The notes under the pieces were generated by a model. The model searched no databases, had not been told where the DNA came from, and saw only the letters and a program-made list of their open reading frames with translations. Positions 4,263 to 32,792 of a stretch of DNA of 64,000 bases are shown here, piece after piece; the first letter of the stretch is position 1, and each line of letters begins with the position of its first letter. Source of the stretch: Octopus sinensis (Eukaryota); contig NC_043013.1 in NCBI RefSeq assembly GCF_006345805.1, positions 57,598,001 to 57,662,000 on the forward strand, given 5' to 3'. Position numbers and translations under genes: made by a program.

Positions 4263-4323
4263 TTTTATAAGCGAAATATTAAAACATATCTATCTATCTA
4301 TATATATATATATATATATCTCA

Positions 4324-4384
<61 letters not shown>

Positions 4385-4440
4385 AGAAAATAAAGAACTT
4401 ATGCACGCACACACATTCGACAAAGACAAACCTGAGTGAC

Positions 4441-5878
4441 GTGGTGGTGAACGCTGCAACCACTTGCGGTAACAGCCCTGTCACCACCACCACCACTAAC
4501 AACAACAACAACGAGAATACTACTGCTACCACCACCACCACCACCACCATCACCACCACCGCCAACTCATCCACTACCTCAACTACCAACAACAACAACA
4601 ATAACAATGACAACAACAATAACAACGATTGCGCCACCATTTCGATATCTGCTGCCACGGCTGTCTCTTCTGCCACTGACACCACCGCCAACACCACCAT
4701 CAAAAACAATAATGACAACAACAACAATTCCGTTCAGACCTTGTTTCCTCCAACACCAAGAACTGAAGGAGGTAAACAAAAGACTGTGACCACCAAACAA
4801 ATTGACGAAAGCTGCTCAAACCCAGGAACAAATTATGCAAGTAATTTTCCACCCCTTCCTACTTGCACAATCAAACATCAGACACCAAATACACCAATTT
4901 TACCAACTGCAGCCAACAACAACATCACCACCAGCAACAACAATAACAAAACAACAACAAATTTCGCCGAGGCGATAAAAGACAAACAGACAACAGTATC
5001 TTTTGCTGCACAACAGATAAAAGATACCAAAGTTTTAATAACGACAGTAGAAGACATGGTAAAAATAAACATACCACAAGAAATATTAGAAAATGAAAAA
5101 AAAAGAACTATCATATATAAAATAAGTAATAAGAAAACAAAAAGTTCAGAGAAGGCTAACACAAGCAAAATCGAAAAATGCTTGAAACCCATCTGGAACT
5201 TCAAACATAGGCGCAGGAGTGGCTGTGTGGTAAGTAGCTTGCTAATCAACCACATGGTTCCGGGTTCAGTCCCACTGCGTGGCATCTTGGGCAAGTGTCT
5301 TCTGCTATAGCCCTGGGCCGACCAATGCCTTGTGAGTGGATTTGGTAGACGGAAACTGAGAGAAGCCCGTCGTATATATGTATATATATATGTGTGTGTA
5401 TGTGTTTGTGTCTGTGTTTGTCCCCCTAGCATTGCTTGACAACCGATGCTGGTGCGTTTACGTCCCCGTAACTTAGCGGTTCGGCAAAAGAGACCGATAG
5501 AATAAGTACTGGCGGTGCACCAGCATGGCCGCAGTCAAATGACAGAAACAAGTAAAAGAGTAAAAGAGTAAAGAGTATGTGACCTGGTGGAACAAGTTCG
5601 CGCATATACAAGTGGTTTTCCACACTGAAGAGTTAGCAAAACGTTTCTCAACGCTAACTCTTCATTCCGATGAACTCACATTAATACCAAGCTATCGTGG
5701 ACAGAAAGTGACTAAGATCACTTTAAACAATGTTCCAAAAACAGCGAACAATCTATGGCTAGCAACAGCCATATGTGTGGAAATGGAAGATTTCACAATT
5801 TTAGAAACTACGGTCACGGAACACAAAAATTGGATGGGAAAAAGAGTAGAATTTCTACTACACATCAACCAAGATGAT
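4441..5878 (+). pseudogene. Tx1-like ORF1 N-terminal part (Thr/Asn low-complexity leader plus conserved ORF1 block), split by a SINE at 5209-5576
   Basis: ORF 4441-5208 joins in frame to 5579 once the SINE and one AT copy are removed (…IWNFKH|VTWWNKFAH…). It is homologous to ORF1 at 27422. Confidence 0.8.
5209..5576 (+). mobile_element. Full-length tRNA-derived SINE with CORE-like domain (family A)
   Basis: A box TGGCTGTGTGG (5220-5230), B box GGTTCAGTCC (5263-5272), CORE-like ATCTTGGGCAAGTGTCTT (5284-5301), internal TA/TG microsatellite and (AGTAAA(A)G)n tail. AT is duplicated at 5207-5208 and 5577-5578. Confidence 0.9.
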
Positions 5879-6922
5879 TACATCGCATCCGTCATCGAGT
5901 ATCGTCTGACCGTCGTGCCTTGTCCCGACCCTACCATCACCAACCTGGAACGTATACTCTTCCGCTTCCTGTGGAAGGGAAACGTTCCGATGGTTAGGCG
6001 ATCCATTTGCTGTCAACACCCGCTAAATGGAGGGCTGGGCATGCCGTGGTTGATGATGCGCAGACATGCGCTGAGACTGCGACATTTCCGGCGCTTCATA
6101 GACGACGGTGAACAGGTGTGGTCGCCTTTTGTGCGGCGCGCTTTCCCGCAGCTCGTCTCCTTGGCCGAACTACAGTCATGGATCAAGCAGAGACCGAGGG
6201 TAGGCGAATGGCACCGCGAGTGTCGCATTGCTCTCAAGCAACTCTGCCGTCCGGGATAAAACTTGTGCGACTCCATCACAACAAAGGCATTCTATAGAGG
6301 ATTAGTGGAAGGGAGGTGCGACGACGATCTCGGGCAGAGTCTGGGCGTCGACGAGAAACACCTGACCCGCCTGTTCAGGACAACTTTCGGGCCGGGACCT
6401 ATGAACAATCACCAAAGATCCCTGGCCTGGCAGTGCTATCGAGAAGCATTACCTGTTCGGGATAAGCTCTACAGACACGGTTCCAGACACACTGGACCGA
6501 CTTTCCCGAGATGCGGTCAGAGCGACGAAACCGTTCTGCACGCACTCGTGCAATGTCCAACCATTTCAGACCTGTGGGCTTATGCCGAACGGCTGCTGTC
6601 ACGTGTGGGACGAATCCGCCTATCGGCCGAGTCTACCCTAAGGTTTGCTCCGCCCCCTTCCCTCAACCTGGAAGGCAAGGCAGTTTTCATCGTACTGATG
6701 GCCATGGTGAAAGAATGTGTGTGATGGACCCGAGCGAAAGGATTAGAGACAAACACTTACCTCTCCAGCAAATCGCTCATCAACTTTTGCAAGTACCACT
6801 TGAAAAGGAAGGTGGGAATGGAGACGAAAGTTTTGTCTCGCGAAAAATTCAAAAATAGATGGGTGAATGTTGCAAAGATGGTGCGTGCGAGTGACGAAAC
6901 CATTTTTAGCATGACCCTGTAA
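5879..6922 (+). pseudogene. Tx1-like ORF2 C-terminal region (post-RT domain plus CCHC zinc finger); no endonuclease or RT core
   Basis: IASVIEYRLTVVPCPD…LERILFRFLWKG…PLNGGLGMP, and FPRC…ETVLHALVQC (first Cys mutated to Phe). One reading frame runs through stops at 6257-6259 and 6722-6724 to the natural TAA at 6920-6922. Confidence 0.88.
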
Positions 6923-7222
6923 ATCGTAAAAAAAGAGAGAGAGAGAGAGCATTTTGCACTCATGTGGTTATTTCCTCCCTGACTGAGGTTCCCGTGGTCT
7001 TTTCTGTAGGCTTTTCTTCCCACGGATGAACCCAATCTTGTTTTATCAATGTATTTTTTTTAAAAAAGTGTTTCTGTGATACACGATTCTTTTTTTCTCC
7101 TCTCGATCCCTTTTGATCGAAATCTTACATTTATTTTCCTTTTTTCCACTCTCGAAAAAAAAGCTCTACATTTGTATTTGTCCCCTCTGTATTCAGCCCT
7201 GTGTGTCTAATAAAAGAAAGTT

Positions 7223-7238
7223 ATCTATCTATCTATCA

Positions 7239-7322
<84 letters not shown>
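7223..7322. repeat. (ATCT)25 microsatellite at the 3' junction of Tx1-like copy 1
   Basis: Directly visible; one unit is ATCA. Confidence 0.95.
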
Positions 7323-10310
7323 CAAATAACAAAAGATCTAGAGTTGCCACCTCTGGTGCCTCTACATATGTCAGAACAGTTGCCATTACCTGCACCCTAT
7401 CTGTCACACTATTAATCTTGTTGAATATCTGAGGCCTTGAGATATACCCCTAATGCAAAACCGAATACCTGAGAGTATTATGGCATGTGATCAAGCAATA
7501 TGCATGACACTAGCAAAAACATATGAATGCTGGCATATCAAATGCTGAGATACAGTATTTCGATTAGACTGGAGAGCAAGAATACATCCGGGAAATTGAC
7601 ATGCCAGTACTCGTAGCTATGACAACATCCTACATCTTTCTCCTTTACCAGATAAATCAATCGCACAAAACGCTACAATTCGTAATAGAACTAAACATTT
7701 GATTTCCTTCGTACTCCCTCCCCCCAATATTCAACCTCTTTTCACTGAATACCCATAAATTCTGTGGTATCTCTGCCCTCCTCTGTTTCGTATTTAGCCT
7801 TAACTTGCCAATCCTAAACCCCGACACAAAACCTAATTAGCTTTATTTACGAAATTATATATTTCTTCATTTTTTAGGTTTTACTTTTCTTTACTTTTTA
7901 TCCTTATTTTATCTTCGGTCCTGCCCCAGCTACCCCTTTTTCTAAGCCTACTATAATAAAATATCACCTACACCCCATCTCCAGCCTCTCAAAGAACCAG
8001 ACTAGCTGATTGCTTTTTTCCCCCGGGCAGCTAACCAAAAATATCCTATTACACCCTTTCACAAACTAAATTCTTAACCTAAATCCACACCTTAATGACT
8101 GCAACTGTTAAGTTAAACAGGTAAATAGTTTTTCATGTTGCACTGTAAGCTCAGGATGAAGTCCATTGTCAAAATGGGGGAAGCTGGGTTTTATTAGCCA
8201 AAACTGTGCAACTATAACAAATTGGTTAGACCTTAGCAAACCTTTATAAGCGGAGATAATTGTACCCTTAGGTTTTTGTGATAGTTTTTTGTGTGAGACA
8301 ACATTTTATGTACCCCACATTTGTTTTGTTTGTTGTTGTAATGTAATTTCTATATAATGGCTTTCTGCCTATAATAAAGAAATGAGTTTTTTGTGAGACA
8401 AAGTCGTTCAGTTGGATTCTGGAAGCTGTGATTGCTTGTTTAGTTTACGTACTTTGGGCTTTGTGTTAGGCCTTTATGGATTTATTTTATGCTTCAGGAA
8501 TTCGCCAGAACTTTCGTCAAATTTTAAATAATTTCAGTGTCACATCTGGGTGAGTAAAAAAAAATCTCTTAAGATATGTTATATTTATGTGAATTTTGAA
8601 CCCTGCATTTGTGTTAGGTTGTGTAGTAATTTTCTATTTTCTGTGAAGAGAAATGTTAAATTTGTATAAATAGCTAAAGGGTGTATGTATTTAATTTTTT
8701 CTTTTAGCCAATTTTTTTTATTCGACAACTCAACTGTCAATTTTGTCAAATGGTTACTCAGCAGGTTTATATGAAGCAGTTTGTGTGAATTTAAAGCAAA
8801 CTAGCTTTTTGTTTGACTGTTTAATTTTTTAACTGTAATTATTGATGTAATCTGGCAGCCGTTTTGTGTCATGAACTTTTAGTTTAAATGGTTGCTTTGA
8901 CATTAGATTTAGGTCCAAGTTTTCAACATTCCAAGGTTCGAAATCCAAGGTTGAACACCGAATTGATAGAAGACAAGGTTCGAAATCCACTGTTCGAAAA
9001 TCAATTTGTACTAAAACCATATTTGTACTAAAATAGAAATCTGGATTTTATGAAATCCAAAATTTTGGAATGCATATTTTTTGAAAAGCCAAATTTGTGT
9101 GCGGCCAATGTTGGTGAAACCAAAAACCGGGATATGGAGTCCGAATTTCTGAACTGTGTATATATGTTAGCCTTGTAACTTTTGACTGCACGTCTGGTGT
9201 AGCATTTGTTGTTTGTTTGTGTATATATTTGTTTGTATGTAAGCTGTTTTTATGCTATTAATATTTTACAAAAAAATTCATGGTGTGGTGCTGTCTTGAA
9301 TTCACCCTATCCTCGTTGATTCTGTAAATTCAGGTTATGGCCACCAGGTAGCAACAAATATATATATATAAACAGACACACACATACACACGCACACAGA
9401 TATCGATCTTTTCAATATTTTGGTCGTGAGAAGTTATCGAGGAACTAAATATTTTAAGGTAGGATTCGATTCCATGTATAAGTAAATTTTGGGTAGTTTT
9501 ACGAGGTTCCTGCTTCTTTGCTCGATTCCTTCTCCAAATTCTTTCATGATTAAAAGAAACACAATTCCAATTTGACATAAGCATGGTTACCATGACCGCA
9601 GACAGTTTTTATTCTTCTTCGTTTTGTTACTAAACTGATATTTAAATTTAAGGTAAAAATATTGTTGCTATGCAAAAATATATCGTATTCTGTAAATAAG
9701 AAGCTACAGGAAAATAAACTGTTAGAATCGCAATGTATCGTAAATATTTACGTATATTTAATTAATTCTGTTTAAGAATATTTATGCCTAAAAACTGATA
9801 TAAATCAATTTTTCTACATAACCAAACTATTAGACTGAATATATTTTTATAAAAAGTAAATGGACCGTGATTATAGTTTCTGTTGAGGTACTGTGCACTT
9901 AGATCCAAATGTAGTTGTTCTGTCGTAGAGTTTATATTTCAGTCAATATCTGCAAACTCTTCGTAGTGGTGTGCAAAAGTTAACAGTAGAACGCGCAGAA
10001 TTATGAGACATACTATAAAACTTATGAACAGATTGTCTATAAAATATGCTTCTACACCGTATTCTGGAACAACTTCGTGTTACATTTGGCACTTAAATAG
10101 GACATAAAACTGAACTACTGAGAGCCTTGATTTCAGCCTTGCGTTTCGTTTGAACTGCGTTACAAAATAAACTGTTAATATTGTTATTGATATCAAATGA
10201 GTTTAAATGAAAATTTTGGTTCTTATGAAACTTGTAACAAAATTAAATATTTGAAAACGATGATGTCTTTAGAGATTAGATATGCAATTGATACTATATG
10301 TACAATATAC

Positions 10311-12233: not shown

Positions 12234-12450
12234 AACATTGGTTTCGAATTTTGGCACAAGACCAGCAATTTTGGAGGTAAGCAAGTCGATTATATCGACT
12301 CCAGTTCTCAACTGGTACTTTACTTTGTCGACACCGAAAGGATGAAAGGCAAAAACAGCCTGAGCAGAATTTGAACTCAGAACGTTATGACGAACAAAAT
12401 GTTGCAAAGTATTTTTCCCGGTGTGTCAACGATTGTGAGGGTTCGTCGCC
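12234..12450 (-). mobile_element. tRNA-derived SINE (family B)
   Basis: The reverse complement contains GGCGACGAA…GTTCTGAGTTCAAATTCTGC…GCCTTTCATCCTTTCGGTGTCGAC…AAGTACCAGTTGAGAACTGG. Confidence 0.85.
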
Positions 12451-15342: not shown

Positions 15343-17346
15343 TATATATTTATACACCGCCAGTGTCAGAATCTGTAATACGAGATGCACACGTGAGAAC
15401 AATGTGCTTAATTAAACGAGGTAAACCGCACCTAATTAATACTCACCCGTTCTAATTACCTAATGAAACTAACCAATCTACCTCAAGCAAACCTCTACCC
15501 AGCGAATTTACCAGTGCAAGAACAAAATTTCAGTGTAAGAATTACCACTTTGTTTAAATTACCATCACATATGTATCAATCATTTTCGCATCCTAACCAA
15601 TGCATCTATCTATACTCGCATTCTGAAGAAATTTACTTACTCCAGTAAATCGAAACGATCGTAAATGCAACCTCATCTGCTTCTTACACACAACAGAACC
15701 GTGAGAGGAGAAAGAGCTGCTAAAGAATTCTTCTTTGTCCTAAAACTGCCTCCCAATATCTTGGGCACCAGTGTAAGCATTGGAGATACGACGAAAACAA
15801 AATATATAAAATACTGAGGAATTAAAAATGCTAATTAATAAAGATATAAAAACATTGCAAGAACAAGGAAATGCCTTAAAGGAATTCTGAAAATAGGTGG
15901 CAAGAGTTTGGAAATTAAATAACAAAAATATGATATGAATGCTTGTATATAATAAGTAGGAAGATTTAAGCAACAGCTGCGATTTCGCATAGAACTCTGC
16001 TTTTCTTTCTCTGATCTTTGCCAATTTAAATGATCTTGTTTGATGCAATTGTTTGAGAATTAATTTCTAAGAAACATTTGTAGATGCTAACAAAGTGTAA
16101 ATATTGCCATGTCTTAGTGTCTCCCTCGGGGATTTCGGTCAATCATTAAAATGTTAACATATTTCTGAATGACTTAACAGTAACTTCACAAACCAATCAA
16201 ATATGCAACTTTTAACTTGGAGGCCAGAAGAAAATTTTGTATTTGTCTGCTGAAACATGATATTGAAAGCTAAGAAACTAAGGTCAATACCTCATTAAGG
16301 TAAGCTAGTAATTTTCATATTCTGAAAACTTCGAAACATTTAAAACAGAAATTCCATGCATTCATTTGTTTAAAAGACGTTATTGTTATAATCTCAATAT
16401 CTGTACACGACTAGTTATTAACGGAGTAAAAAAAGGGTCCATGGAATTCTAACCGTGACAGATCTGTTTCATTTCAGATTGTGTTCATCCCAGGGTACAT
16501 TCATTAGTATAAATTCTCATTCCACCAGTTACTTTAAAAGATCCTTGTCACATGAGAGAGACCTGGTTATTTTTTCTAACAAACTGTCATAAATGGTGAC
16601 ATCTTGAGTGTCATTGCTCAAATCCCTCGCTTAAAATCCTAAAACTTTTCAGCGTTTAGGAATGCAAAGTTATGAATATTAAAGAAAACTGTCTACGACA
16701 TTCCCTGGGTCTCATTTAAAAGAACATGAAGATTAATGACTTCATAGTGGAGACATAAACATAAGTCTGACGATGACGATGGCTATTCTGTCAGTTTTGA
16801 ATTATAGACATTCCAGTTGTTCACCCCGTAGAACTACCAATCCTTTGTATCTTAAACGTAATCCTCAGTTAGTATCATTGTAAACTGTCTGTATCAATAG
16901 TGGGCATTTGTATCTCAAGTAATGTATATTTTGTGTCATATTGCAACTGGTTGAGTATTCCTCAGACATTTAAGCATTGAACATAGACGACTCACACATA
17001 CACACACATACTTATAAAGACCGACAATTAAAAGCTCTCTTTTGAGTGCTCATATCCTCATTCGTAATATACACTTTCTGTTGTAGTGATTTCCTATTTC
17101 TGTTGCTCTGTAACATATCAAACCACTTTACATGCTCATCGTTCGAAATAAAGACTCTCTTCTCCGAAAATAAAGCAAATAGAATTTCTCATTGAATCAC
17201 AGAAGAAGGAAACGGGAAGCACTCGAAGGTCAATAGCTGCAACGGTCATACATAGATTGAGAGTTGATGACGAAAGTGGCGAGGAATTAACGAATCATCG
17301 TTTATACACACACACACACACACACACACGCAAACACATCTATCTA

Positions 17347-20218: not shown

Positions 20219-20580
20219 ATATATATATAAGGCAGATACATATATAAACATACCTAAATACATGTACACCACTACACACTCAATAACACTATAAAAATAT
20301 ATATATTAGAAGGTTTGGAGATGATGTACAGGTATTTAATATTAGAAAAAATGAGGTACTCAGAAATTCGGATGGTTTTATATTTACAGATATTTATTTG
20401 TATATCACATGTTTTTATATATCATATATCATATATTGCGCTTACGTCCATTCTAGTGGAGTTTTCAAATTGAACTAAGTTCTTGGGGAAATTTTGACCA
20501 TTTTCATAGTGTTGTTGAGTGTGTAGTGGTGTACACGTATTTAGGTATGTTTATATATGTATCTGCCTTATATATATATA
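20219..20580. repeat. Inverted duplication (arms ~20219-20296 and 20501-20580) around a repeat-family fragment; PLE-like architecture
   Basis: ATAAGGCAGATACATATATAAACATACCTAAATAC(A/G)TGTACACCACTACACACTCAA(T/C)AACACTAT is matched by its reverse complement (~95%). Confidence 0.85.
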
Positions 20581-23564: not shown

Positions 23565-24096
23565 TCTATATATATATAAAACAGAGAATGTCTGTCTATC
23601 TGTCTGTCTGTGTGTTTCCCTAAAACTTGAGAACTACACAACCAATTTCATTCAAATTTTATACATGCCTTACTTAGGGTCCATGTTGTTTCATGGACAA
23701 AAAATGTTCAACTTCATGCCTAGGGCGAAGCCATAACAATATCATATTTTCTCCACTATTTCAGTATCACGTGTTAAAAGTGAAACAAAACCATTTCTCT
23801 ATTTTATGTCAGATACTTTCACTTTAACAATAAAAAAGATAATAATCACAATTGAAATATATGTAGTCAGTAATGATTGAAATCAAACTAAAGTATAATA
23901 TAATCGTAATATAACAAAAGTAAAAATAGCAATTGGTATAAAATTGCATCAATGACTTGAACTTGAATAAGTGGTTTCACATTAATAAGAATAAATTAAA
24001 AATAAAATTAGCGTGCAGAAATAGAATAGTTCAGATGGAGCTGTGCACATACCGTTTACCACGGCTTTTACATTAGATTATCTGCTAATTAGCTAG
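23565..24096 (+). mobile_element. Non-autonomous Helitron-like element (DINE-1/Lep1 type); 3' end uncertain
   Basis: The 5' end A|TCTATATATATATAAAA is followed by a (GTCT)n tract and AAAACTTGAGAACTACACAACCAATTTCATTCAAATTTT. A weak hairpin (CCGT..ACGG) and a CTAG lie near 24052-24096. Confidence 0.55.
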
Positions 24097-24457
24097 CATT
24101 AAGTATCTATATGAAGTTTGGCTGTATGTAATGTCAGTTTTCTCGAACAGCCGCTTCTACTGAGTACTGCTTTTGGTTTATTTCTTATACATAAAGGACT
24201 ATAGCTTCAACTGCGTACTTCTTCTTGATTCACCGTAAGGTTGGTTGTTATTATTATTACTGTTTAACTATTGTTATCACGTTTGTTGGTTCCTCGTAAG
24301 GGAAACGTTGTTGTATTGCATATGTTAAATAATTATAAACTGTAACCCTCCCCCTTTGGGAGTAGGAGCTTTGGTAATTGTTTAAAATTTGAATTGTGTC
24401 CTTGTTTGGAAAAATTGACAATATTTTCACCGTTTATACGGAAGCATCTTTGTTACA

Positions 24458-24965
24458 ATGTCTTCGATAGAAGAAAGTCCAAAAATGAATTTCGCTGCAG
24501 CCATCAGCGGGCGCGAACTCATTAAAATTTAAATGGAAGAAATACAAACCTATTTCGGTTTGATCGGGGAATCTAGGACAACACCATCGAACGAAATAAA
24601 GAATTAAATTAGAGAAAATACTATTGTCTATAAAGTATACAATGTAGAGAAAAAAAAAGATTTGAGCACCTGGAGGAAAGCACCATCGAAAAGTGTCTTG
24701 GTGCGACTATGAAAGATATCTAACCAGAGGCGGTAAATTCACCACAATAAAAGCAAGGTTCGAGTCAACAGAGCGTGCAAGGGAGTACCTTGGAAAGGGG
24801 AAATATTTTACTTTTACCTTTATATCTGGGACGTAGGACGTCCCGGATAAAAATTTAAAATTTCCCCTCAGAAGTAGAGGTAGGCTGGATTGTAGCCACA
24901 CTTCTATACAAGAGGGAGGACAAGATACAATTGATGGAAATTGCAAGAGACGGGCCGACAATTCC
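24458..24965 (+). pseudogene. Tx1-like ORF1 5' fragment (copy 3)
   Basis: Frameshifted translation MSSIEESPKMNFAAAISGRELI…IRENTIVYKVYNV…KARFES…ILLLPLYLGRRT; the ILLLPLYLGRRT block (24804-24840) is identical to ORF1 at 27422. Confidence 0.82.
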
Positions 24966-25540: not shown

Positions 25541-26199
25541 ATAATTTGGGTTCAGCAACGATTAGCTTCACCACACACCGAAGTTTAGAAATAGCAGTCA
25601 AAATCTTAGCTATTCCTTCTACTTTAAAGGGAGTTCCCAGAAAATCCAAAGTACTTGAAAACAAACCACGTAGGCAATCATAAATAATTGTATCTCAATT
25701 ATTAATAATTGTATCTTAAATTTGAAGGCACTGGAAAACATCACTTCACCTAACGGTATCAGAGAGATCGTATTCCGTGTTAGTGCAGCCAAATTAAAAA
25801 TAAATGAATGAGAGTAAGTCATCCTCCCTCGCCCTCCAGCGTGTTGCCAAAGTAAGATGCTACAGTTTTTTCTGGGGGAAAATTTCACAATTATTAATAA
25901 TTGAGATACAATTATTTATGATTGTGGAATCCTACGCTGAAGAGACGAAAATAGTCGGGTAAGTTATGATTATTTATTATTTATGCTTTATACTGGCTCA
26001 ATTCCGAAACGCGCGTCCGTGGGTAACCTATTATAGAATGATTTTCGTCATTTTTTTCCCTTTTGCCCACGTGGTTTGTTTTCAAGTGCTTTGGTTTTTC
26101 TGGGAACTCCCTTTAAAGTAGAAGGAATAGCTAAGATTTTGACTGCTATTTCTAAACTTCGGTGTGTGGTGAAGCTAATCGTTGTTGAACCCTGATTAT
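25541..26199 (+). mobile_element. Penelope-like pseudo-LTR region with nested inverted repeats and a hammerhead
   Basis: 137-bp inverted arms at 25541-25677 and 26063-26199, a perfect 35-bp inner inverted repeat at 25677-25711 and 25888-25922, and a hammerhead motif at 25931-26023. Confidence 0.7.
25931..26023 (+). ncRNA. Type I hammerhead ribozyme motif with a long, weak stem II region
   Basis: CCTACG-CTGAAGA-(62 nt)-GAAA-C-GCGC-GTC-CGTGGG. Stem I is 6 bp (one G-U), stem III is the palindrome ACGCGCGU, and the triplet is GUC. Stem II pairing is not obvious in this copy. Confidence 0.65.
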
Positions 26200-26299
26200 N
26201 NNNNNNNNNNNNNNNNNNNNNNNNNNNNNNNNNNNNNNNNNNNNNNNNNNNNNNNNNNNNNNNNNNNNNNNNNNNNNNNNNNNNNNNNNNNNNNNNNNN
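26200..26299. other. Assembly gap (100 N, probably a placeholder length)
   Basis: Run of exactly 100 N. Confidence 0.99.
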
Positions 26300-26527
26300 C
26301 TCCCTCTTCAAACTGTCGAAATATTTTTCTAAAGTCTTCTTCTCGACTACCACTTCTTCCATTTCTAGTTCACTCGCAACCAGGCCTCTGCCTGCTGCTC
26401 TCGCATACGTCTGGTCTTGCATTTTCAAAATCTCCAAATAAAATTCACCACGTCCTCCAGCAACGAATTCGAACTCACAACCGCGATACACAATAACCGT
26501 AACACAAAATAACCGACACCAAAAAAA
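26300..26527 (-). mobile_element. 5' UTR and ORF1 start of a further Tx1-like element (copy 4), cut off by the gap
   Basis: ATG at 26422-26420 gives MQDQTYARAAGRGLVASELEMEEVVVEKKTLEKYFDSLKRE, resembling copy 3 (NFAAAISGRELI..EEIQTYF). The T-rich UTR shares TGTGAGTTCGA(A)TTC with the UTR of the element at 26957. Confidence 0.6.
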
Positions 26528-26956
26528 CTGCTAGCTGCAGATATCTTTCTCGACTTCGTAAATATATGTATCTAATTTTCAGTGAAGTTTATTCACTGAT
26601 TACCAAAATCAGAAATATTAAATTTTTAAATATCTCATAAAGATATGTACGGTGGTGGGATAATAGACTGGTTGTATACTGTCAATTTAACGTGACAGTA
26701 ACGGGTTACACCACCGCTGTTTAGCCCTAGGAACCATCGACGCTTCCTGTCGGCTTCGACACATTTTCTGTGTCCTTATATATTTACGAAGGGGAGACAA
26801 ATACCCCCAACCATTCTATCGTCCCACCACAGTACATATCTCTATGAGATATTTAGAAATTTAATATTTCTGATTTTGGTGATCAGTGAATAAACTTCAC
26901 TGAAGATTAGATATATATATTCACGAAGTCGAGACAGATATCTGCAGCTAGCAGGC
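26528..26956. repeat. Palindromic hub: a reverse copy (26528-26811) and a forward copy (26808-26956) of the ~355-nt hammerhead-bearing repeat
   Basis: ~140-bp inverted arms (26528-26668 and 26814-26954). 26607-26811 is the reverse complement of 32408-32612 (~88%). There is CAAC microhomology at the inversion junction (26808-26811). Confidence 0.9.
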
Positions 26957-27204
26957 CTTTTGAATTTTTCCTCGGAATACGTCAAACATTTTTCTGTTGT
27001 TGCAAGCCGTTGTGTGAGTTCGATTCCGTTTGTCTTTTTGTTTTGCGTTACACGTGAAAAATTTTTGAACTGTTGTTTTTTGACTCAGTAATTTTCGCCC
27101 TTCGGGGTAGAAAAATTCTTTGTTTTTTGTGTGAACTGTTAACCTGTATAGGTTATTTTTGAAAAATTCCCTCGTCATTTGTGACAAGTTTCTTGTTTTC
27201 TATA

Positions 27205-28688
27205 ATGGAACTTGGCTTAAATTCAAAAAAAGATTTTCTCGAGATGGGAGAAGGCACAACCGATAACAAACAAAAGGTTACACAGGCAAAACCAAGTTTC
27301 TCAGAACGCCGTAGGCGGCAACGTGGTAGAGCTGGAAGTGGCTATGGAAAAGTTCTTCCAGTTCAGAAAGTTAATTTAAAAAAACGGTGAAGAAACGCGA
27401 TTAATACCGCCCCCTGAAACTATGGAGGCAATTCGAGAAAAGACGGTTACTTACAAAGTATATTATATAAAAGAAAAAAGAATAACCGACGTGAAAAATT
27501 ATATAGTCGAAAGGTGTATGGCGCCAATATGGAGTAAGGTTCGCTACGTCAGCCGAGGTGCGAGAAGCGCTACAATAGAAGCTCATTTCGAGTCGGCTGA
27601 TGTAGCGAAGGAAATGTCAACACAAACATTGAAAAGCGAACATATCCTATTACTTCCCTTGTATTTGGGGCGTAGGACGGCGAAAGTTACAATTGAGGAC
27701 ATACCAAAGGGATACGAAGTGACGTGGGCGGCAACAGCGGTCATATTTGATGTGGAGGAAAAATTAACAATATTGAGCATGAGGAAGAAAGAGGCAACAA
27801 ACTGGAAAGGCCAACAGCTTGAGATGATTATTCAAGTAGAAAATTCTACGCAGGAAAGCTTGCCAGATAGGGTCTTCGTGGGGGAGGGGCATACCATACG
27901 TGTATCGGTAGAGGGACGCAGGCCCAGATGTTTCAAGAGCGGGCAAAAAGGCCATGTTCGCTCCGTATGTACGAAAAAAAAAATGGTCAACGCCCTGCCT
28001 CAAAACGCTGTGAAAAACACAGAGAACAACAAAGTAGACAACACAGCAACAACAAAAGAAAACACGGAAAAGAAAAAACAAACTGAATTTCAAAAAGAGG
28101 ACAAAAAGAATGAAAAACAAAACGAAAAAGAAAAGGAAGAGGAAAATAATCTAGCAAAAAAGATGAGCAAGAAGAAATGGAATATACGACTGTGACAAAC
28201 AAAAAGAAAAATCTAATACCCTGACTCTCCACCCCAAACAAAAAACAAAATCAATATAAAAAAAAATTTCCAATCCCATCCCGCTGGTACTACGTTTGTA
28301 GGACAGCAATTCAATAAACCCCACCCCAACTTTAAAAGGGTTTAAATCAAATGATAAGTGTATAGCTTATAATACGAGAAATGAGAGAGTTGTGAGGTTC
28401 GTGAAAACAAGAACTCAAATCAAATGCTTTAAAACGACAGAGAAGGACCCGGAATGGAGATACGCAAGGGTCGGCGAGGAGGAATGGAAGGAGAGACTCT
28501 TCCAACATGTAAAGGACGGTTTCATTAAGGATCTCACCCAGAAGGTGATAGCTGGTAGAGTGCATATCAGCCCGGCAGCCACACCAACCCAGAGCCCGGT
28601 GGCAACGCCGGTGAAATACCCAGCAACAACGGAGAGTGTGGGGAAGGCAGGCGGACATAACCTGTCATGCTCCCTCTCGCAACCGTAA
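27205..28688 (+). pseudogene. Tx1-like ORF1 (nucleic-acid-binding protein with a CCHC zinc knuckle)
   Basis: Starts at ATG 27205 and is frameshifted into ORF 27422-28195 (RPRCFKSGQKGHVRSVC knuckle, second Cys mutated to Ser). A K/E-rich tail follows, with a final segment at 28392-28688. Confidence 0.8.
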
Positions 28689-28710
28689 GTAAATTATTTT
28701 TCTTTCTTCG

Positions 28711-31700
28711 ATGATTAAGTTAGGCTGTATAAATGTGGGTGGAATGGGGTCGAAATGGAAACAGGCTTGTTTGCTGGACGACCTCATTTCACATAGAATC
28801 GATGTGGCTATTGTCACCGAGTCCAAGATGAAAGGACCATAATCGTTCTCGCCACTTCTCAATGGCTACAAGAAATTTATTTCTCCTAGCCGAGGGTGAG
28901 GTGCAGGCGTGGCAGTCTTTATCAGGAATAACTTGGACTTACAGGTAAGTACTGTCTTTCTGGACTCAGAAGGTAGGCTGGTTGTCCTAGATGTGACTCA
29001 CGTGAGTAAGCAGTCCTTCAGGTTGGTAGCTGTCTACGCTCCTAATGGGTGTGGGCAAACCGGTTTTTATCGGGACCTGGATCACTTTCTAGTGACGTCT
29101 AAAACGGTAGTCTTGGTAGGGGATTTCAACACTATTCTCGCTGCGCGGGTTGATAGTGTAGGCTCGAACGATAGGAAAGGGAATCCTTGCCTCAAGGCTC
29201 TACTAGCGAGCTTTAATCTAGTAGACCGTTTTCGACTGGATAAGCCGAACTTTCCACAGTGGACGTTGAGTAATAACGACGGCTCACGCAGATCGTACAT
29301 AGATAGAGTATTTGTTAAGGAACGAGATAAGAATAGTGTTAGCTGTCCACAATTTTCTGTTGTGCCTTACACGGATCACAAACTTGTGACGTGTGAGGTA
29401 CAGGTAGATAAATGCCATAGACAGGGTCCCGGGTACTGGAAAATGAACAAGTCTATTTTGACTGGTGAAACTTTCCGCAGCCGGATTAAGGAATTAGTCC
29501 AGAGGGCATTATGTGGCACCATCATTAATAATAGATGGTGGCTCGCCCTCAAAAGAGCCATCCGTTTGGAGTCCATTAGATTTAGCAAGCAGCTAAGTTT
29601 AGATAGGGCGAATTCGTTAAGACCTTAGACGAGGCAATGGAATCTGGCTGTACATCTGGAGTGTTAGCAGCGAGAACGGTCTTGTACCGTCACCTCAACG
29701 CCAAGCATGAGGGGTGTAGAGTCAGAGCTAAGTTACGTACAGGGAAATGAGAAGGTATTAACGTTGCCGGATGGGCCCGTCGTGAGGAGAGTCAGGAGGG
29801 CAAAAAGTCCTGTATTAAGGTCTTTCACTGACGAGCAGGATCGCAAGATCTATGGACAAATGCTGGTTGTTTGGGGATGGCGGTCCGCTCGAGCGAGGGG
29901 AGGCCTTAAAGGACTTCCTAGCCGGTGGTCCGCGGCTCTCGACACGTGAGGCGGAATGCTGTGAAGGATCGATCTCTCCCGCGGAGGTAAGAGAGGTTAT
30001 GGCCGGTTGCGCCGGGGAAAAGTCGCCGGGGTTAGATGGTCAGCCCAATGAGTTCTATTGTTGTATGCCGGACTTGTTCGGAGATATACTGGCGGGAGTC
30101 TATGCGAACTGGCAACATAATGGGAGGATTCCCAGTTCTGTGAGCCGGGGAGTTGTGACGCTGGTCCAGAAAGACCCGAACAAGAGGGATAGGATGAGTA
30201 ATTATAGGCCCATAACTCTACTTAATGTAGAGTTTAAGATTTTGGCCAAGGTGTTAGCAAAAAGGTTGACGGCTGTCGTGGAGAAACTTGTCGGGAAGCC
30301 ACAGAAATGTGCAATCCCAGGCAGGTCGATCCAGGATAATCTTCACCTTCTCCGCTACACTATAGACAAGGTCGGGAAATTAGCCGGCAAAGGAGGGGCA
30401 TTGGTCCATTTAGACCAAAGTAAAGCGTTCGATAGGGTAGACCATCGGTACTTCGCGACTGTCCTCGGGGCGGCTGGGCTGGGCACTGGCTTTTGCGGGT
30501 GGATCTCAGCTATGTACAGCGGCATCAAGTCCAAAATCCAGATAAACGGTTACCTAACGGAGCCGCTTTCGATCAAGCGTTCAGTTCGTCAAGGGTGTCC
30601 CTTGTCCCCGCTCCTGTATGTTTTGGCTCTTGAGCCATTGCTGCGGAAGTTGGAGAAGTTGGGAGGCAACCCTAATGAAATCGGATGCGGTAAGTCTATT
30701 TCTGCCTATGCGGATGACGTCACCCACATTGTGTCCAACGAAGCACAGCTAACTCGTGTAGAAGGTGCTCTCCGAAGATACGAAGTTAACAAGGACAAGT
30801 CCACCGGTTTGCGCCTCGGCACCTGGAGGAACAAGCCGATATTGTCCAGTGTTGTTGGACACTGGACAGATGGTCCTGTTAAATTGCTCGGAGTTTGGTT
30901 TGGTCCAGACTCCCAGACGGAGAAGAATTGGAGCGAGGTAGCGAACAAGGTAGAAGCTATAGTACGGAAGTGGTCCGGAAGGCATCTTTCATTGAAAGGG
31001 AGGGCGGAGGTGGTACAGATGTTTATAGCCTCTGTCGTCACCTACCGCCTGACCGTCGTGCCTTGCCCCGATTCGTGGTTAAACAAGTTGGAACGACTCC
31101 TTTTCCGCTTTTTGTGGAAAGGAGGAAAGCCACTTGTAAGACGCTCCGCGTGTTGCCAGAAACCGCTAAATGGTGGGCTGGGGATGCCTCGGCTAATGAT
31201 GCGCAGGCATGCGTTGAGGCTGAAACATCTCTGGTGTCACCTGGAGGGTGATAAGGTGTGGAGTCCGCTGGCAGAGAAATTCTTCCCGCGACCGGCCTCT
31301 ATGGAGAGATTTAAACCCGGTTTCATTAAAAGACTAACCGGACTTTATGGCAGAAGGAGTGCCGACAGGCACTCTGGCTAATCCACAAGGTGGGCAAGGC
31401 CGGCAGCGGGAATACCACCTCGGTGTTCTATAGAGGGCTGGTAGAGGCAAAAAATGACGACGTCCTAGGAGGGGCTCTGGGGTTCGATGAGAATCAACTC
31501 TCCAACCTGTTTAAGAAGACTTTCAGGCCGGGGTATTTAGACAATTACCAAAAATCCCTGACCTGGCAGTGCTATAGGAATGCATTACCTGTTCGCAAGG
31601 AGTTATCCAGGCACGGAATGTCAGTGCCACCGACATGTCCAAGATGTGGGTTGGACGATGAAACCGTTCAACACGCTTTTGTACAATGTCGGGAGCTGTC

Positions 31701-32010
31701 AAGCTTGATAAGTTACATTGAACACATGTCGTATCTGGGACGAGTACAGCTGTCGGCTGGATCTATGATAAAGATGATAACGCCAACTGGACTCCCAAAG
31801 GAAGGTAAGGCTTGTTTTTACTGTACGGTGACAGTTCTGAAAGAGTGTGTGTGGAGAACCAGAATGGAAGGTTTAGTGACAGGGTCCTTTGTCTCTGGCT
31901 CCGGTTTGTTAAAATACTTCAGATATCATCTGAAGAGCCTGCCACAGAAAGAGTATATGAAACGTTGGAAGGATGTGATGAGAAAGGTGGATGTTAGTAA
32001 CCCAGCTTAA
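28711..32010 (+). pseudogene. Tx1-like ORF2: APE endonuclease, reverse transcriptase and CCHC zinc finger
   Basis: APE motifs INVGG, VTES, LVAVYAPN, GDFN, YIDRVFV, TDH and GPGYWKMN. RT motifs YRPITLLN, DQSKAFDRV, QGCPLSP and YADD. C-terminal CPRC…ETVQHAFVQC. Several stops and frameshifts. Confidence 0.95.
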
Positions 32011-32321
32011 TCATTGAAGAAAGGAAAAATTAGTTGCTGGGCCTTATAAGCTGCCGGGTTCAAAATTCGAAACCGGCACTTCTCATTCCTTTTCATTTTA
32101 CATATGTTATAATGTCTAATGATTTTTTTTTGTTAAAAAAAAAACACGCACTAAAGTTCTCGTTATAAAGGCGAAAGTAAGCCAAGTTTTCGTTCAAGTT
32201 ACATTATAATTAAATTTTTATAATTTTTAAGTATCATTCGAACTCTCATAATATTCTTTGTAATTGTTTGTCTTGTGATGTCCAATTCTATGTAAAATCG
32301 CATGATTTTAATAGAGATTTC

Positions 32322-32612
32322 ATCTGCAGCTAGCAGGCTTCTGCTACTCTAGACCGATGATGGGCAAAGACCCTGAAACATGCGTGTCTCTAGATGCAGG
32401 CCTAGCTGTTGGGAGTATTTGTCTTCCCTTCATAAATATATAAGGACACAGGAAATGTGTCGAAGCCGACAGGAAGCGTAGATGCTTCCTAGGGCTAAAC
32501 AGCGGTGGTGTAATCCCCTACTGTCACGTTAAATGGACAGTATACAACCATTCTATCACCCCACCACCGTACATATCTCTATGAGATATTTAGAAATTTA
32601 ATATTTCTGATT
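32322..32612 (+). mobile_element. Continuation of the hammerhead-bearing repeat (retrozyme or PLE pseudo-LTR-like monomer)
   Basis: Begins with the duplicated target and contains the hammerhead. 32545-32612 repeats 26808-26875 (68-nt terminal redundancy). Confidence 0.85.
32348..32394 (+). ncRNA. Degenerate type I hammerhead ribozyme
   Basis: TCTAGA-CCGATGA-T-GGG(CAAAGA)CCC-T-GAAA-CATGCGT-GTC-TCTAGA. Stem I is 6 bp, stem III is a near-palindrome (ACAUGCGUGU) and the triplet is GUC. The core has U4C, so this copy is probably inactive. Confidence 0.72.
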
Positions 32613-32644
32613 ATTATTAAATATATATACATATATATATCTAA

Positions 32645-32792
32645 ACGGACGCGCTTTTCAGTCTTCGTGTACTAATTTTATTCAGAAGGCTTTCGTCAGC
32701 ACGGGACTGTCCATTATGCCAAATAGTGAGACTGAACCCAAGCTATGTGGTTGGGAAAGAAACTGCTTACCACACAGCCACGTCTGTGCCTA
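32645..32792 (-). mobile_element. Diverged 5' half of a family A SINE
   Basis: The reverse complement reads AGGCACAGACGTGGCTGTGTGGTAAG…CCAACCACAT…GGGTTCAGTCTCAC. Confidence 0.75.

What the first reader, a model, noticed from the sequence alone, without database searches (positions are those of the whole stretch)
26300..32612. Candidate new system: Tx1-like retrotransposons that target one site beside a hammerhead ribozyme
Seen: the full-length Tx1-like element (26957-32321) is flanked by a 17-bp direct repeat ATCTGCAGCTAGCAGGC. Removing the element restores a continuous repeat in which this site ends 9 nt before stem I of a hammerhead. Seen: a second Tx1-like 5' end on the minus strand (26527 toward the gap) starts right after the same sequence (ATCTGCAGCTAGCAG, 26542-26528) in an oppositely oriented copy of the repeat. 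Its UTR (~105 nt vs 248 nt) and ORF1 N-terminus differ, so it is not a simple inverted duplicate. Established: Tx1-clade APE elements include target-specific families, such as Tx1L/Tx2L in DNA transposons, Keno in U2 snRNA, Mutsu in 5S rDNA, Dewa in tRNA spacers and Koshi/Kibi in microsatellites. Inference: this family parasitises a self-cleaving ribozyme repeat (retrozyme or Penelope pseudo-LTR), a target class I do not know to be described. A weaker hint is ATCTGC-taatt-AGCTAGCA at 24080-24098, ~360 nt upstream of copy 3's ORF1.
Basis: partly seen in the sequence, partly recalled or inferred. Interest (0 to 1): 0.88.

Follow-up and report, generated by a model that had tools for sequence, protein, structure and literature searches.

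The report
Octopus LINE that targets a ribozyme-like repeat
A decayed L1/Tx1-type jumping gene sits at one exact spot in a 355-base structured repeat carrying a hammerhead-ribozyme-like motif, and related copies in other octopus genomes sit at the same spot, so this lineage is very probably site-specific, a habit already known for Tx1 elements but not for this kind of target.

Summary
A structurally complete but decayed L1/Tx1-type element (26957-32321) is flanked by an exact 17-bp duplication. It lies inside a 355-nt, AT-rich, strongly folding repeat (z = -7.2).

A second element starts at the same nucleotide in an inverted copy of the repeat. A motif HMM built from outside ORF1 N-termini ranks that ORF 2nd of 1,636 six-frame pieces (E = 0.049). 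It also shares the 5'-UTR motif TGTGAGTTC.

The decisive evidence came from other genomes.
- In Octopus bimaculoides, a non-orthologous locus has a related element at the homologous position of the homologous repeat, flanked by a different, perfect 19-bp duplication.
- A second element at that locus starts directly after the regenerated site.
- Two Logan contigs share the same upstream repeat flank up to one point, then carry different 5' UTRs.

The "hammerhead" fits a type I fold, expected 0.04 times per window by chance. Its core reads CCGAUGA (U4 to C), Rfam reports nothing, and only one copy is visible. Ribozyme activity is therefore unproven.

Tx1 families are already known to target transposons, satellites and small-RNA genes. 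I file this as a new member of a known kind with a new target class. Use of the repeat's promoter or ribozyme is untested.

The parts
26300..26527 (-). 5' end of a second Tx1-like element (#2): about 103-nt 5' UTR, then an ATG-initiated ORF (MQDQTYARAAGRG...LEKYFDSLKRE) that runs into the assembly gap at 26200-26299
   Evidence: It starts directly after the site. A motif HMM from 18 outside ORF1 N-termini ranks this ORF 2nd of 1,636 six-frame pieces, E=0.049. The 5'-UTR motif TGTGAGTTC lies at 26479-26471, 50 nt from the junction. The best nhmmer non-self hit in the window is the ORF1 N-terminus of element 1, but E=0.93.
26528..26542 (-). Target-site copy ATCTGCAGCTAGCAG at the 5' junction of element #2
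26543..26811 (-). Inverted copy of the repeat (A 26811-26607, B 26606-26543), head-to-head with the plus copy
   Evidence: Inverted repeats I1 (93%) and I2 (91%); BLAST
26808..26939 (+). Plus-strand repeat upstream of the insertion: the last 68 nt of A (26808-26875), then B (26876-26939). It includes a TATA-like box at 26912-26921, 25-28 nt upstream of the site.
   Evidence: Direct repeat D6 (96%). The TATA-like box lies at the same distance in window #1, window #2 and O. bimaculoides.
26940..26956 (+). 5' copy of the 17-bp target-site duplication ATCTGCAGCTAGCAGGC
26957..32321 (+). L1/Tx1-type non-LTR retrotransposon #1, structurally complete but decayed. 5' UTR 26957-27204; ORF1 27205-28195 (frame-broken near 27290-27380; CCHC knuckle with Cys to Ser); ORF2 28711-32010 (APE to about 29625, RT 29819-31378, zf-RVT 31330-32007); 3' UTR 32011-32321, ending ...AATAGAGATTTC with no poly(A).
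   Evidence: relatives
32322..32338 (+). 3' copy of the 17-bp target-site duplication
32339..32407 (+). Type I hammerhead-like domain. Helix I TCTAGA 32348-32353 / 32389-32394, extended by CTGC/GCAG and AGGC/GCCT. Core CCGATGA 32354-32360 (U4 to C). Helix II GGG/CCC with a U.U at its base, 32361-32374. GAAA 32375-32378. Helix III ACA/TGT with loop TGCG, 32378-32387. Predicted cleavage after C32388.
   Evidence: Descriptor scan: chance 0.04 per window. No Rfam hit. A U.U at the base of helix II is known from axolotl HHR_Amex2 (PMC7229834).
32408..32612 (+). Segment A of the repeat, ending at the repeat's natural 3' end (...ATTTCTGATT). An octopus-type SINE follows.
   Evidence: The inverted copy in O. 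bimaculoides ends at the same point.

Best explanation
This is a site- and orientation-specific lineage of L1/Tx1-type non-LTR retrotransposons of octopuses. Its target is one position in a 355-nt, highly structured, retrozyme-like repeat with unit order B - site - hammerhead-like domain - A.

Shown:
- Element 1 inserted with a 17-bp target-site duplication.
- Element 2 begins at the same nucleotide in a second copy of the repeat, in the same relative orientation.
- Related elements in O. bimaculoides and in a third data set occupy the homologous position of the homologous repeat.

Inferred mechanism:
1. The APE endonuclease nicks the bottom strand at the left edge of the site (top strand GAT^ATCT).
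2. The freed 3' end, ...GCCTGCTAGCTGCAGAT-3', anneals to the copy of the site carried at the 3' end of read-through transcripts from resident elements.
3. Reverse transcription therefore starts exactly at the element's last base (...GATTTC, no poly(A)).
4. The top strand is cut 17-19 bp downstream, which gives the duplication and regenerates an intact site. That regenerated site explains the tandem E1-site-E2 arrangement in O. bimaculoides.

A multicopy repeat is a harmless landing pad, and it may also supply transcription.
For: - Exact 17-bp duplication, and the same 15-mer at the second junction: 3 hits against 0.06 expected.
- The repeat's circular order A-B-site-HH-A is seen in pieces without an element.
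- Element 2 is a Tx1-like 5' end: HMM rank 2 of 1,636, E=0.049. TGTGAGTTC lies 58 and 50 nt into elements 1 and 2, and also in L062 E1 and L068.
- L062 was chosen only by ORF1 similarity. Its element is 72-87% identical to element 1. It is flanked by the perfect 19-bp repeat TTTTTCAAACAGCTGGTCG (9764-9782 and 15393-15411).
- The L062 upstream flank is homologous to B and is preceded by an inverted copy of A (75%). A second element starts right after the 3' copy of the 19-mer.
- L062 flanks do not match the window, so the loci are not orthologous.
- L065 and L068 share 75%-identical B-like flanks that stop at one point, followed by different 5' UTRs.
- Out-group relatives sit elsewhere: Argonauta L001 has a 17-bp duplication in AT-rich DNA, and L063 is not in the repeat. 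The habit therefore belongs to a sublineage.
- Target-specific Tx1 families are established (PMC4494074).
Against: - Only about seven junctions at four loci were seen. No genome-wide census was possible, because the host genome is not in any DNA collection I could scan.
- No uninterrupted site was seen, so the empty-site sequence is inferred from the duplication.
- The site sequence differs strongly between the window (ATCTGCAGCTAGCAGGC) and O. bimaculoides (TTTTTCAAACAGCTGGTCG). What the endonuclease reads is therefore unclear. The conserved block is upstream: GAAGNCNAGACAG.
- Every repeat copy seen lies next to an element of this lineage.
- All element copies seen are decayed.
- The nick positions and the read-through priming step are inference by analogy with R1 and R2.
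Confidence: 0.75

Rival explanations
1. One ancestral insertion was copied as a composite. On this view a single element landed once in the repeat. The unit [A'-B-site-element-site-HH-A] was then multiplied by the repeat's own amplification or by segmental duplication, so shared junctions reflect descent and not targeting.
For: Every repeat copy seen is associated with an element. Retrozyme-like repeats amplify as tandem or inverted units (PMC8557442).
Against: The duplications differ in sequence and length between loci (17 bp against 19 bp), yet each pair is perfect, while the elements differ by 13-28%. Elements at the same junction have unrelated 5' UTRs of different length (window #1 against #2; E1 against E2; L065 against L068). 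E2 is preceded only by the 19-mer, with no A'-B.
Confidence: 0.12
2. The repeat pieces are the element's own termini. On this view A'-B-site is the true 5' end (a promoter region) and site-HH-A is a 3' extension, so there is no separate target family.
For: A TATA-like box sits 25-28 nt upstream of the site in three variants. The flank is always present upstream.
Against: The window's right-hand copy and the inverted copy in L062 both end at the same natural 3' end, A205, and have variable 5' truncation, as an independent retroelement would. The A-to-B continuity shows tandem units. E2 lacks A'-B. The site is duplicated exactly, as a target-site duplication is. The 355-nt unit folds as a closed rod only when the element is removed.
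Confidence: 0.08
3. Coincidence under a weak nick preference. On this view the endonuclease only prefers AT(C/T)T, and two hits at one place in the window are luck.
For: Targets of relatives also start with ATT or ATCT: (ATT)n in L002, (ATCT)n next to famB, TATTTTT in L001.
Against: The unit has 17 AT[CT]T sites on the two strands, so the same site and orientation has odds of about 1 in 17 even if both hits are granted to fall in the repeat. The same position recurs in two other data sets. The O. bimaculoides site starts TTTTT, not ATCT.
Confidence: 0.03

Closest known systems
Target-specific Tx1-clade LINEs: Tx1L in the piggyBac-type Tx1D of Xenopus; Tx1-Mar in Mariner-N4; Tx1-9_AMi in Harbinger; families in LTR elements and satellites; Keno (U2), Mutsu (5S), Kibi and Koshi (microsatellites)
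   Same: An APE plus RT plus zf-RVT LINE with an RRM/CCHC-type ORF1 and no poly(A). It inserts at one position and in one orientation in another multicopy sequence, with a duplication of 15-20 bp, and tandem reinsertion occurs.
   Different: The target is a retrozyme-like repeat with a hammerhead-type motif, a class I did not find described. The host is a cephalopod. The site sequence itself has diverged between species while the position is kept. Placement in Tx1 rather than L1 was not tested by phylogeny.
Metazoan non-LTR retrozymes (Cervera and de la Pena 2020, PMC7229834), now argued to be non-autonomous Penelope-like derivatives (bioRxiv 10.64898/2026.07.22.740005)
   Same: For the target repeat: a 355-nt unit, 42% GC, more than one unit in tandem, a type I hammerhead architecture with a short helix III and a U.U at the base of helix II, a very stable rod-like fold, and a head-to-head inverted 5'-truncated copy as in Penelope-like insertions.
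   Different: The one visible ribozyme has U4 to C in the core. Only 1.2 units are seen, not long arrays. No expression or circular-RNA data exist. No Penelope-like ORF is present in the window.
R2 and R1 rDNA-specific LINEs
   Same: The proposed logic is the same: co-transcription with the target, read-through target sequence at the RNA 3' end annealing to the nicked target, and, for R2, a self-cleaving ribozyme that trims the co-transcript.
   Different: R2 uses a restriction-like endonuclease and carries its own HDV-like ribozyme at its 5' end. Here any ribozyme would belong to the target and lie 3' of the element, and its use is pure conjecture.

Membership tests
L1/Tx1 group of APE-type non-LTR retrotransposons | ORF2 with an N-terminal apurinic/apyrimidinic-type endonuclease | tested here: met
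   PF03372, E=3.5e-8. Human L1 endonuclease structures match at E=4.5e-8.
L1/Tx1 group of APE-type non-LTR retrotransposons | RT closest to L1-group RTs, followed by a C-terminal zinc-binding domain | tested here: met
   PF00078, 2e-28, and PF13966, 1.2e-10. Human L1 ORF2p matches at 7e-45 against R2 at 1e-22.
L1/Tx1 group of APE-type non-LTR retrotransposons | Target-site duplication flanking a full-length copy | tested here: met
   17 bp in the window, 19 bp in O. bimaculoides, 17 bp in Argonauta.
Tx1 clade specifically (as opposed to the L1 clade) | RT phylogeny places it within Tx1 | not tested
   No reference Tx1 or L1 sequences could be fetched. Indirect support only: among recently active O. 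vulgaris insertions the only L1-type LINE class listed is 'L1-Tx1' (PMC13282606), and the ORF1 is of the RRM plus CCHC type (P0126 is named a CCHC-type domain protein).
Target-specific Tx1 family (criterion of Kojima 2015, PMC4494074) | One type of sequence in more than 20% of the flanks of the family | tested here: inconclusive
   All six 5' junctions seen for the sublineage lie in the same repeat, as does the one 3' junction that shows flanking DNA: window x2, L062 x2, L065, L068. The sample is tiny and there was no genome-wide census.
Metazoan non-LTR retrozyme (the target repeat) | Type I hammerhead with the conserved core CUGANGA...GAAA...UH | tested here: inconclusive
   Helices I-III, GAAA and the UC cleavage site are present. 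The core reads CCGAUGA in the only copy visible. There is no Rfam hit, but Rfam also misses a canonical-core mini-hammerhead at 15618-15669.
Metazoan non-LTR retrozyme (the target repeat) | Short tandem repeats of about 150-450 bp with low GC | tested here: met
   355-nt unit, 42% GC. A runs directly into B in both window copies. Only about 1.2 units are seen, not long arrays.
Metazoan non-LTR retrozyme (the target repeat) | Expressed as self-cleaved linear and circular RNA | not testable with these tools
   No transcriptome access. The fold is unusually stable: -124 kcal/mol against -84.9 +/- 5.4 for shuffles, z=-7.2.
Penelope-like element pseudo-LTR | Adjacent Penelope-type RT / GIY-YIG ORF | tested here: not met
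   No such ORF next to the repeat. Of the seven other long ORFs in the window scanned against Pfam, none had a match.

The most novel reading that the evidence does not exclude
The element does not merely land in the repeat but lives off it. On this reading the repeat's TATA-like box, 25-28 nt upstream of the site in all three variants, starts transcription at about the first base of the site. The repeat's hammerhead, 67 nt past the element's 3' end, then trims read-through RNA. The result is a template bounded by target sequence on both sides, a ribozyme borrowed from the target. R2, by contrast, carries its own HDV-like ribozyme. The kept position despite a diverged site sequence would then reflect selection for promoter and ribozyme spacing.
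Probability: 0.15. Interest if true: 0.8.

Novelty: new member of a known kind. Interest (0 to 1): 0.5.

Why it matters
- It adds a cephalopod lineage and a new target class, a retrozyme-like hammerhead repeat, to the list of site-specific Tx1-type LINEs.
- The targeting is kept across octopus species even though the 17-19-bp site itself has diverged. That makes it a natural case for asking what an APE-type endonuclease actually recognises.
- It points to retrozyme-like repeats in cephalopods, which the papers I could search do not describe.
- If the promoter or ribozyme of the target is used by the element, that would be a new form of dependence between two retroelements, and it can be tested directly.

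Tried and rejected
- **Rfam, whole window and small sub-windows.** No hammerhead was reported. I wrote a descriptor scan instead.
- **Metagenome and viral-contig scans for the 17-mer.** There were 54 metagenome hits, all chance matches in unrelated DNA, and no viral hits.
- **RT homologue search.** The best hit was Argonauta hians at 59%. That element lies in AT-rich DNA, not in the repeat.
- **ORF1 word-indexed searches.** They returned only 1 hit and 4 hits. The exhaustive representative search found the useful relatives.
- **Exact look-ups.** The window's RT ORF and P0125 are not on record.
- **Direct similarity of element 2 to element 1.** Not significant: Smith-Waterman z=3.7 but equalled by shuffles; nhmmer E=0.93; two broader N-terminal HMMs failed.
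- **The repeat as a SINE partner sharing the element's 3' tail.** Rejected, z below 0 in both species.
- **The 24080 hint and the sequence left of the gap as repeat copies.** Rejected, z about 0.
- **Orthology of L062 with the window.** Rejected.
- **Cluster names as a way to settle Tx1 against L1.** Uninformative.
Full report
**What is at the coordinates**

The 17-mer ATCTGCAGCTAGCAGGC occurs exactly at 26940-26956 and at 32322-32338. Its first 15 bases occur on the minus strand at 26542-26528. That is three matches against 0.06 expected. The bases just outside the two plus-strand copies differ, so the duplication is exactly 17 bp.

Between the copies lies a 5,365-bp element.
- Its 5' UTR is about 248 nt.
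- ORF1 has an RRM-like body and a CCHC knuckle. The second Cys is Ser in this copy, but it is intact in the O. bimaculoides relative P0126.
- ORF2 starts at ATG 28711. It holds an APE endonuclease (PF03372), an RT (PF00078) and zf-RVT (PF13966).
- The 3' UTR is 311 nt and ends ...AATAGAGATTTC without poly(A).

The copy is complete in structure but dead. ORF2 has in-frame stops at 28840, 28897, 29626 and 29665. It shifts from frame 1 to frame 2 between 29625 and 29885 and back near 31340. The ORF1 N-terminus is frame-broken as well.

Against solved structures, the RT matches human L1 ORF2p at 7e-45 and R2 proteins at 1e-22 or weaker. The endonuclease matches L1 EN. The element therefore belongs to the L1/Tx1 group. 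I could not build an RT tree. The Tx1 label rests on two indirect points. Among recently active O. vulgaris insertions the only L1-type LINE class listed is "L1-Tx1" (PMC13282606), and the ORF1 is of the RRM/CCHC type.

**The host sequence**

The flanks belong to one repeat. Its pieces are:
- A: 32408-32612, and inverted at 26811-26607, 93% alike.
- The last 68 nt of A: 26808-26875, 96%.
- B: 26876-26939, and inverted at 26606-26543.
- The site.
- A 69-nt hammerhead-like domain: 32339-32407.

Joining the two flanks gives a 355-nt unit with 42% GC. It folds into a closed, rod-like structure of -124 kcal/mol. Dinucleotide shuffles give -84.9 +/- 5.4, so z = -7.2 and 0 of 200 shuffles fold as well.

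The plus copy holds about 1.2 units, and A runs straight into B. The plus copy abuts a head-to-head, 5'-truncated inverted copy. Both the window's right-hand copy and the inverted copy in O. bimaculoides end at the same base of A. The family therefore has a fixed 3' end and variable 5' truncation, as retroelements do. Tandem units with an adjacent inverted truncated copy are the arrangement described for Penelope-like elements (PMC8557442). Size, GC content and tandem layout fit metazoan non-LTR retrozymes (PMC7229834).

**The hammerhead**

Rfam reports no hammerhead at the gathering score, or at E<=10 in 451-nt and 101-nt sub-windows. Read by hand, 32348-32394 is a type I hammerhead with these parts:
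- Helix I: TCTAGA / TCTAGA, extended by CTGC/GCAG and AGGC/GCCT. The last four bases of the site take part in this extension.
- Core: CCGAUGA.
- Helix II: GGG/CCC over a U.U pair.
- GAAA.
- Helix III: ACA/UGU with loop UGCG.
- Cleavage after C32388.

My descriptor scan finds it only if U4 is relaxed. The chance expectation for that relaxed descriptor is 0.04 per window, from 100 block shuffles. The same scan finds a canonical-core motif at 15618-15669, expected 0.02 times, and Rfam misses that one too. Rfam silence is therefore weak evidence against these short-helix-III forms.

The U.U at the base of helix II is known from active axolotl ribozymes (PMC7229834). U4 to C is not, so this copy is probably impaired. 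It is the only copy of that half of the domain I could see. The inverted copy in O. bimaculoides keeps only the GAAAC...cleavage-site half. Whether the family consensus is catalytic is open.

**The second element**

On the minus strand, the site is followed by about 103 nt and then an ATG-initiated ORF that stays open up to the assembly gap. Direct comparison with element 1 is not significant. Smith-Waterman gives z = 3.7 but is equalled by shuffles, and nhmmer gives E = 0.93. Even so, that nhmmer hit is the best non-self hit in the whole window, and it falls on the ORF1 N-terminus of element 1. Two broad N-terminal HMMs failed.

Two results support it.
- A compact motif HMM was built from 18 ORF1 N-termini taken only from outside the window. 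The consensus is ..SFAEAAGg...eelekYrnliKke. It ranks element 1 first (E = 1.8e-5) and this ORF second of 1,636 six-frame pieces (E = 0.049). That is ahead of two undoubted Tx1-like ORF1s in the window.
- The 5'-UTR motif TGTGAGTTC occurs three times in the window, against 0.52 expected. Two of the three lie 58 and 50 nt into elements 1 and 2. GTGAGTTC (the motif without its first T) lies 33 nt into the O. bimaculoides element, and the full TGTGAGTTC is also in L068.

I accept the fragment as a related but distinct element. It is not an inverted duplicate of element 1.

**Copies elsewhere**

The RT search reached only 59-62% identity. The best hit is in Argonauta hians. That element has a 17-bp duplication, TATTTTTAAAATTTGTA, in AT-rich DNA and is not in the repeat. 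The word-indexed ORF1 search found almost nothing. The exhaustive representative search with ORF1 found same-lineage proteins. P0123 (XP_052823724.1, O. bimaculoides) could be located on chromosome CM046605.1, giving locus L062.

At L062:
- An element 72-87% identical to element 1 is flanked by a perfect 19-bp direct repeat, TTTTTCAAACAGCTGGTCG (9764-9782 and 15393-15411).
- Its upstream flank is homologous to B, in the same orientation.
- That flank is preceded by an inverted copy of A at 75% identity. The repeat 3' ends of the two species align with z = 9.3.
- A second, different element begins directly after the 3' copy of the 19-mer and then runs into a gap.
- The rest of L062 does not match the window, so this is not the orthologous locus.

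Two Logan contigs from another sequencing project, L065 and L068, carry related elements. Their upstream flanks are 75% identical to each other and homologous to the end of A plus B. The shared flank stops at one point, after which the two 5' UTRs differ.

More distant relatives are not in the repeat. These are L063/L064, window copy 3 at 24458-24960, the internally deleted element at 4384-7225, and Argonauta.

**Interpretation**

About seven junctions at four loci in three data sets fall at the same position and orientation of one repeat family. The elements differ in subfamily and in 5' UTR. The duplications differ between loci but are perfect within each pair. Independent, site-specific insertion is the simplest reading (confidence 0.75).

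The alternatives fit less well.
- **Descent from one ancestral composite (0.12).** This is hard to square with perfect but different duplications, and with unrelated 5' UTRs at the same junction.
- **The repeat as the element's own ends (0.08).** This conflicts with E2 having only the 19-mer upstream, and with the repeat's own fixed 3' end.
- **Chance under a weak AT(C/T)T nick preference (0.03).** The unit has 17 such sites, and the position recurs across genomes.

The repeat is also not a SINE partner of the element. Their 3' tails show no similarity, with z below 0 in both species.

The mechanism is inferred by analogy with R1 and R2:
1. The bottom strand is nicked at GAT^ATCT.
2. The freed end anneals to site sequence carried by read-through RNA.
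3. Reverse transcription starts exactly at the element's last base.
4. The top strand is cut 17-19 bp downstream, which regenerates the site.

The regenerated site accounts for the tandem E1-site-E2 arrangement. The missing poly(A) and the conserved terminus (...AATAAAGAAATC in relatives) fit this scheme.

One puzzle remains. The site sequence differs strongly between the window and O. bimaculoides. The block just upstream, GAAGNCNAGACAG, is conserved, and so is a TATA-like box 25-28 nt upstream of the site.

**Comparison with what is known**

Tx1 families are known to target a piggyBac-type transposon, Mariner and Harbinger transposons, LTR elements, satellites, microsatellites and U2/U5/5S genes (PMC4494074). 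This finding therefore works like, and very probably is, one more target-specific Tx1-type lineage.

Three things are new here: the target class, the cephalopod host, and the conservation of position across species. My paper searches found no LINE reported to target a retrozyme or hammerhead repeat, and no description of such repeats in cephalopods. The searchable library is incomplete.

The most novel reading still allowed is that the element depends on the repeat's promoter and ribozyme for its transcript ends. I put that at about 0.15.

**Limits**

- No genome-wide census was possible.
- No empty site was seen.
- Only one hammerhead copy is visible.
- There is no RT phylogeny.
- The host species of the window was not identified. 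Octopus-type SINEs and the closest relatives point to an Octopus species.

Noticed in passing
window 15618-15669 (+): An isolated type I mini-hammerhead motif with a canonical core: GCATT-CTGAAGA-[ATTTACT/AGTAAAT]-GAAA-CG..CG-TA|AATGC. It is expected 0.02 times per window by chance, is not reported by Rfam, and has no repeat structure around it.
   Followed up: partly
window 4384-7225 (+): A second, more distant Tx1-like element. Its ORF1 is interrupted by an octopus-type SINE (about 5200-5560). It is internally deleted, so ORF1 joins the RT C-terminus at about 5866/5879. Its 3' end, ...AATAAAAGAAAGTT, is followed directly by (ATCT)n at 7226-7320, and a short (ATCT)3 lies upstream at 4287-4300. 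This may be a microsatellite target or a microsatellite tail.
   Followed up: partly
window 24076-24960 (+): A third Tx1-like fragment (5' UTR plus a broken ORF1 from ATG 24458). AGATT-ATCTGC-TAATT-AGCTAGCA at 24076-24098 resembles the target site with two indels, but the surrounding DNA is not the repeat and it lies about 110 nt further upstream than the UTR homology reaches.
   Followed up: partly
window 25541-26199: A foldback or MITE-like palindrome. The outer arms are 137 nt (25541-25677 / 26063-26199, 96%) and the inner arms 38 nt (25675-25712 / 25887-25924, 100%). It ends exactly at the 100-N assembly gap, so the join to element 2 is unverified.
   Followed up: no
window 26912-26921; 26569-26559 (-); L062 about 9738-9748: A TATA-like box (TATATATATT / ATATATATTT) sits 25-28 nt upstream of the first base of the target site in all three repeat variants. 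That spacing would place a transcription start at about the site itself.
   Followed up: partly
L062 9764-20288 (O. bimaculoides CM046605.1): Two different Tx1-like elements lie in tandem, separated only by the 19-bp site. Both are decayed, and the second runs into a 100-N gap at 20289.
   Followed up: yes
L001 6869-12667 (Argonauta hians): The closest RT relative (59%) has a 17-bp duplication, TATTTTTAAAATTTGTA, next to (ATTT)n. Its 3' UTR appears to be tandemly duplicated, with a second copy of ...CGGTGAAGATGAGA... starting near 12425.
   Followed up: partly
L002 2008-2105: A related element from a JGI metagenome contig ends ...AATAAAAGAAATC and is followed directly by (ATT)n that runs to the contig end.
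   Followed up: no
window 5200-5390 (+) and 32627-32792 (-): Copies of the abundant octopus-type SINE with a (TA/TG)n tail. One abuts the 3' end of the repeat at 32613.
   Followed up: no
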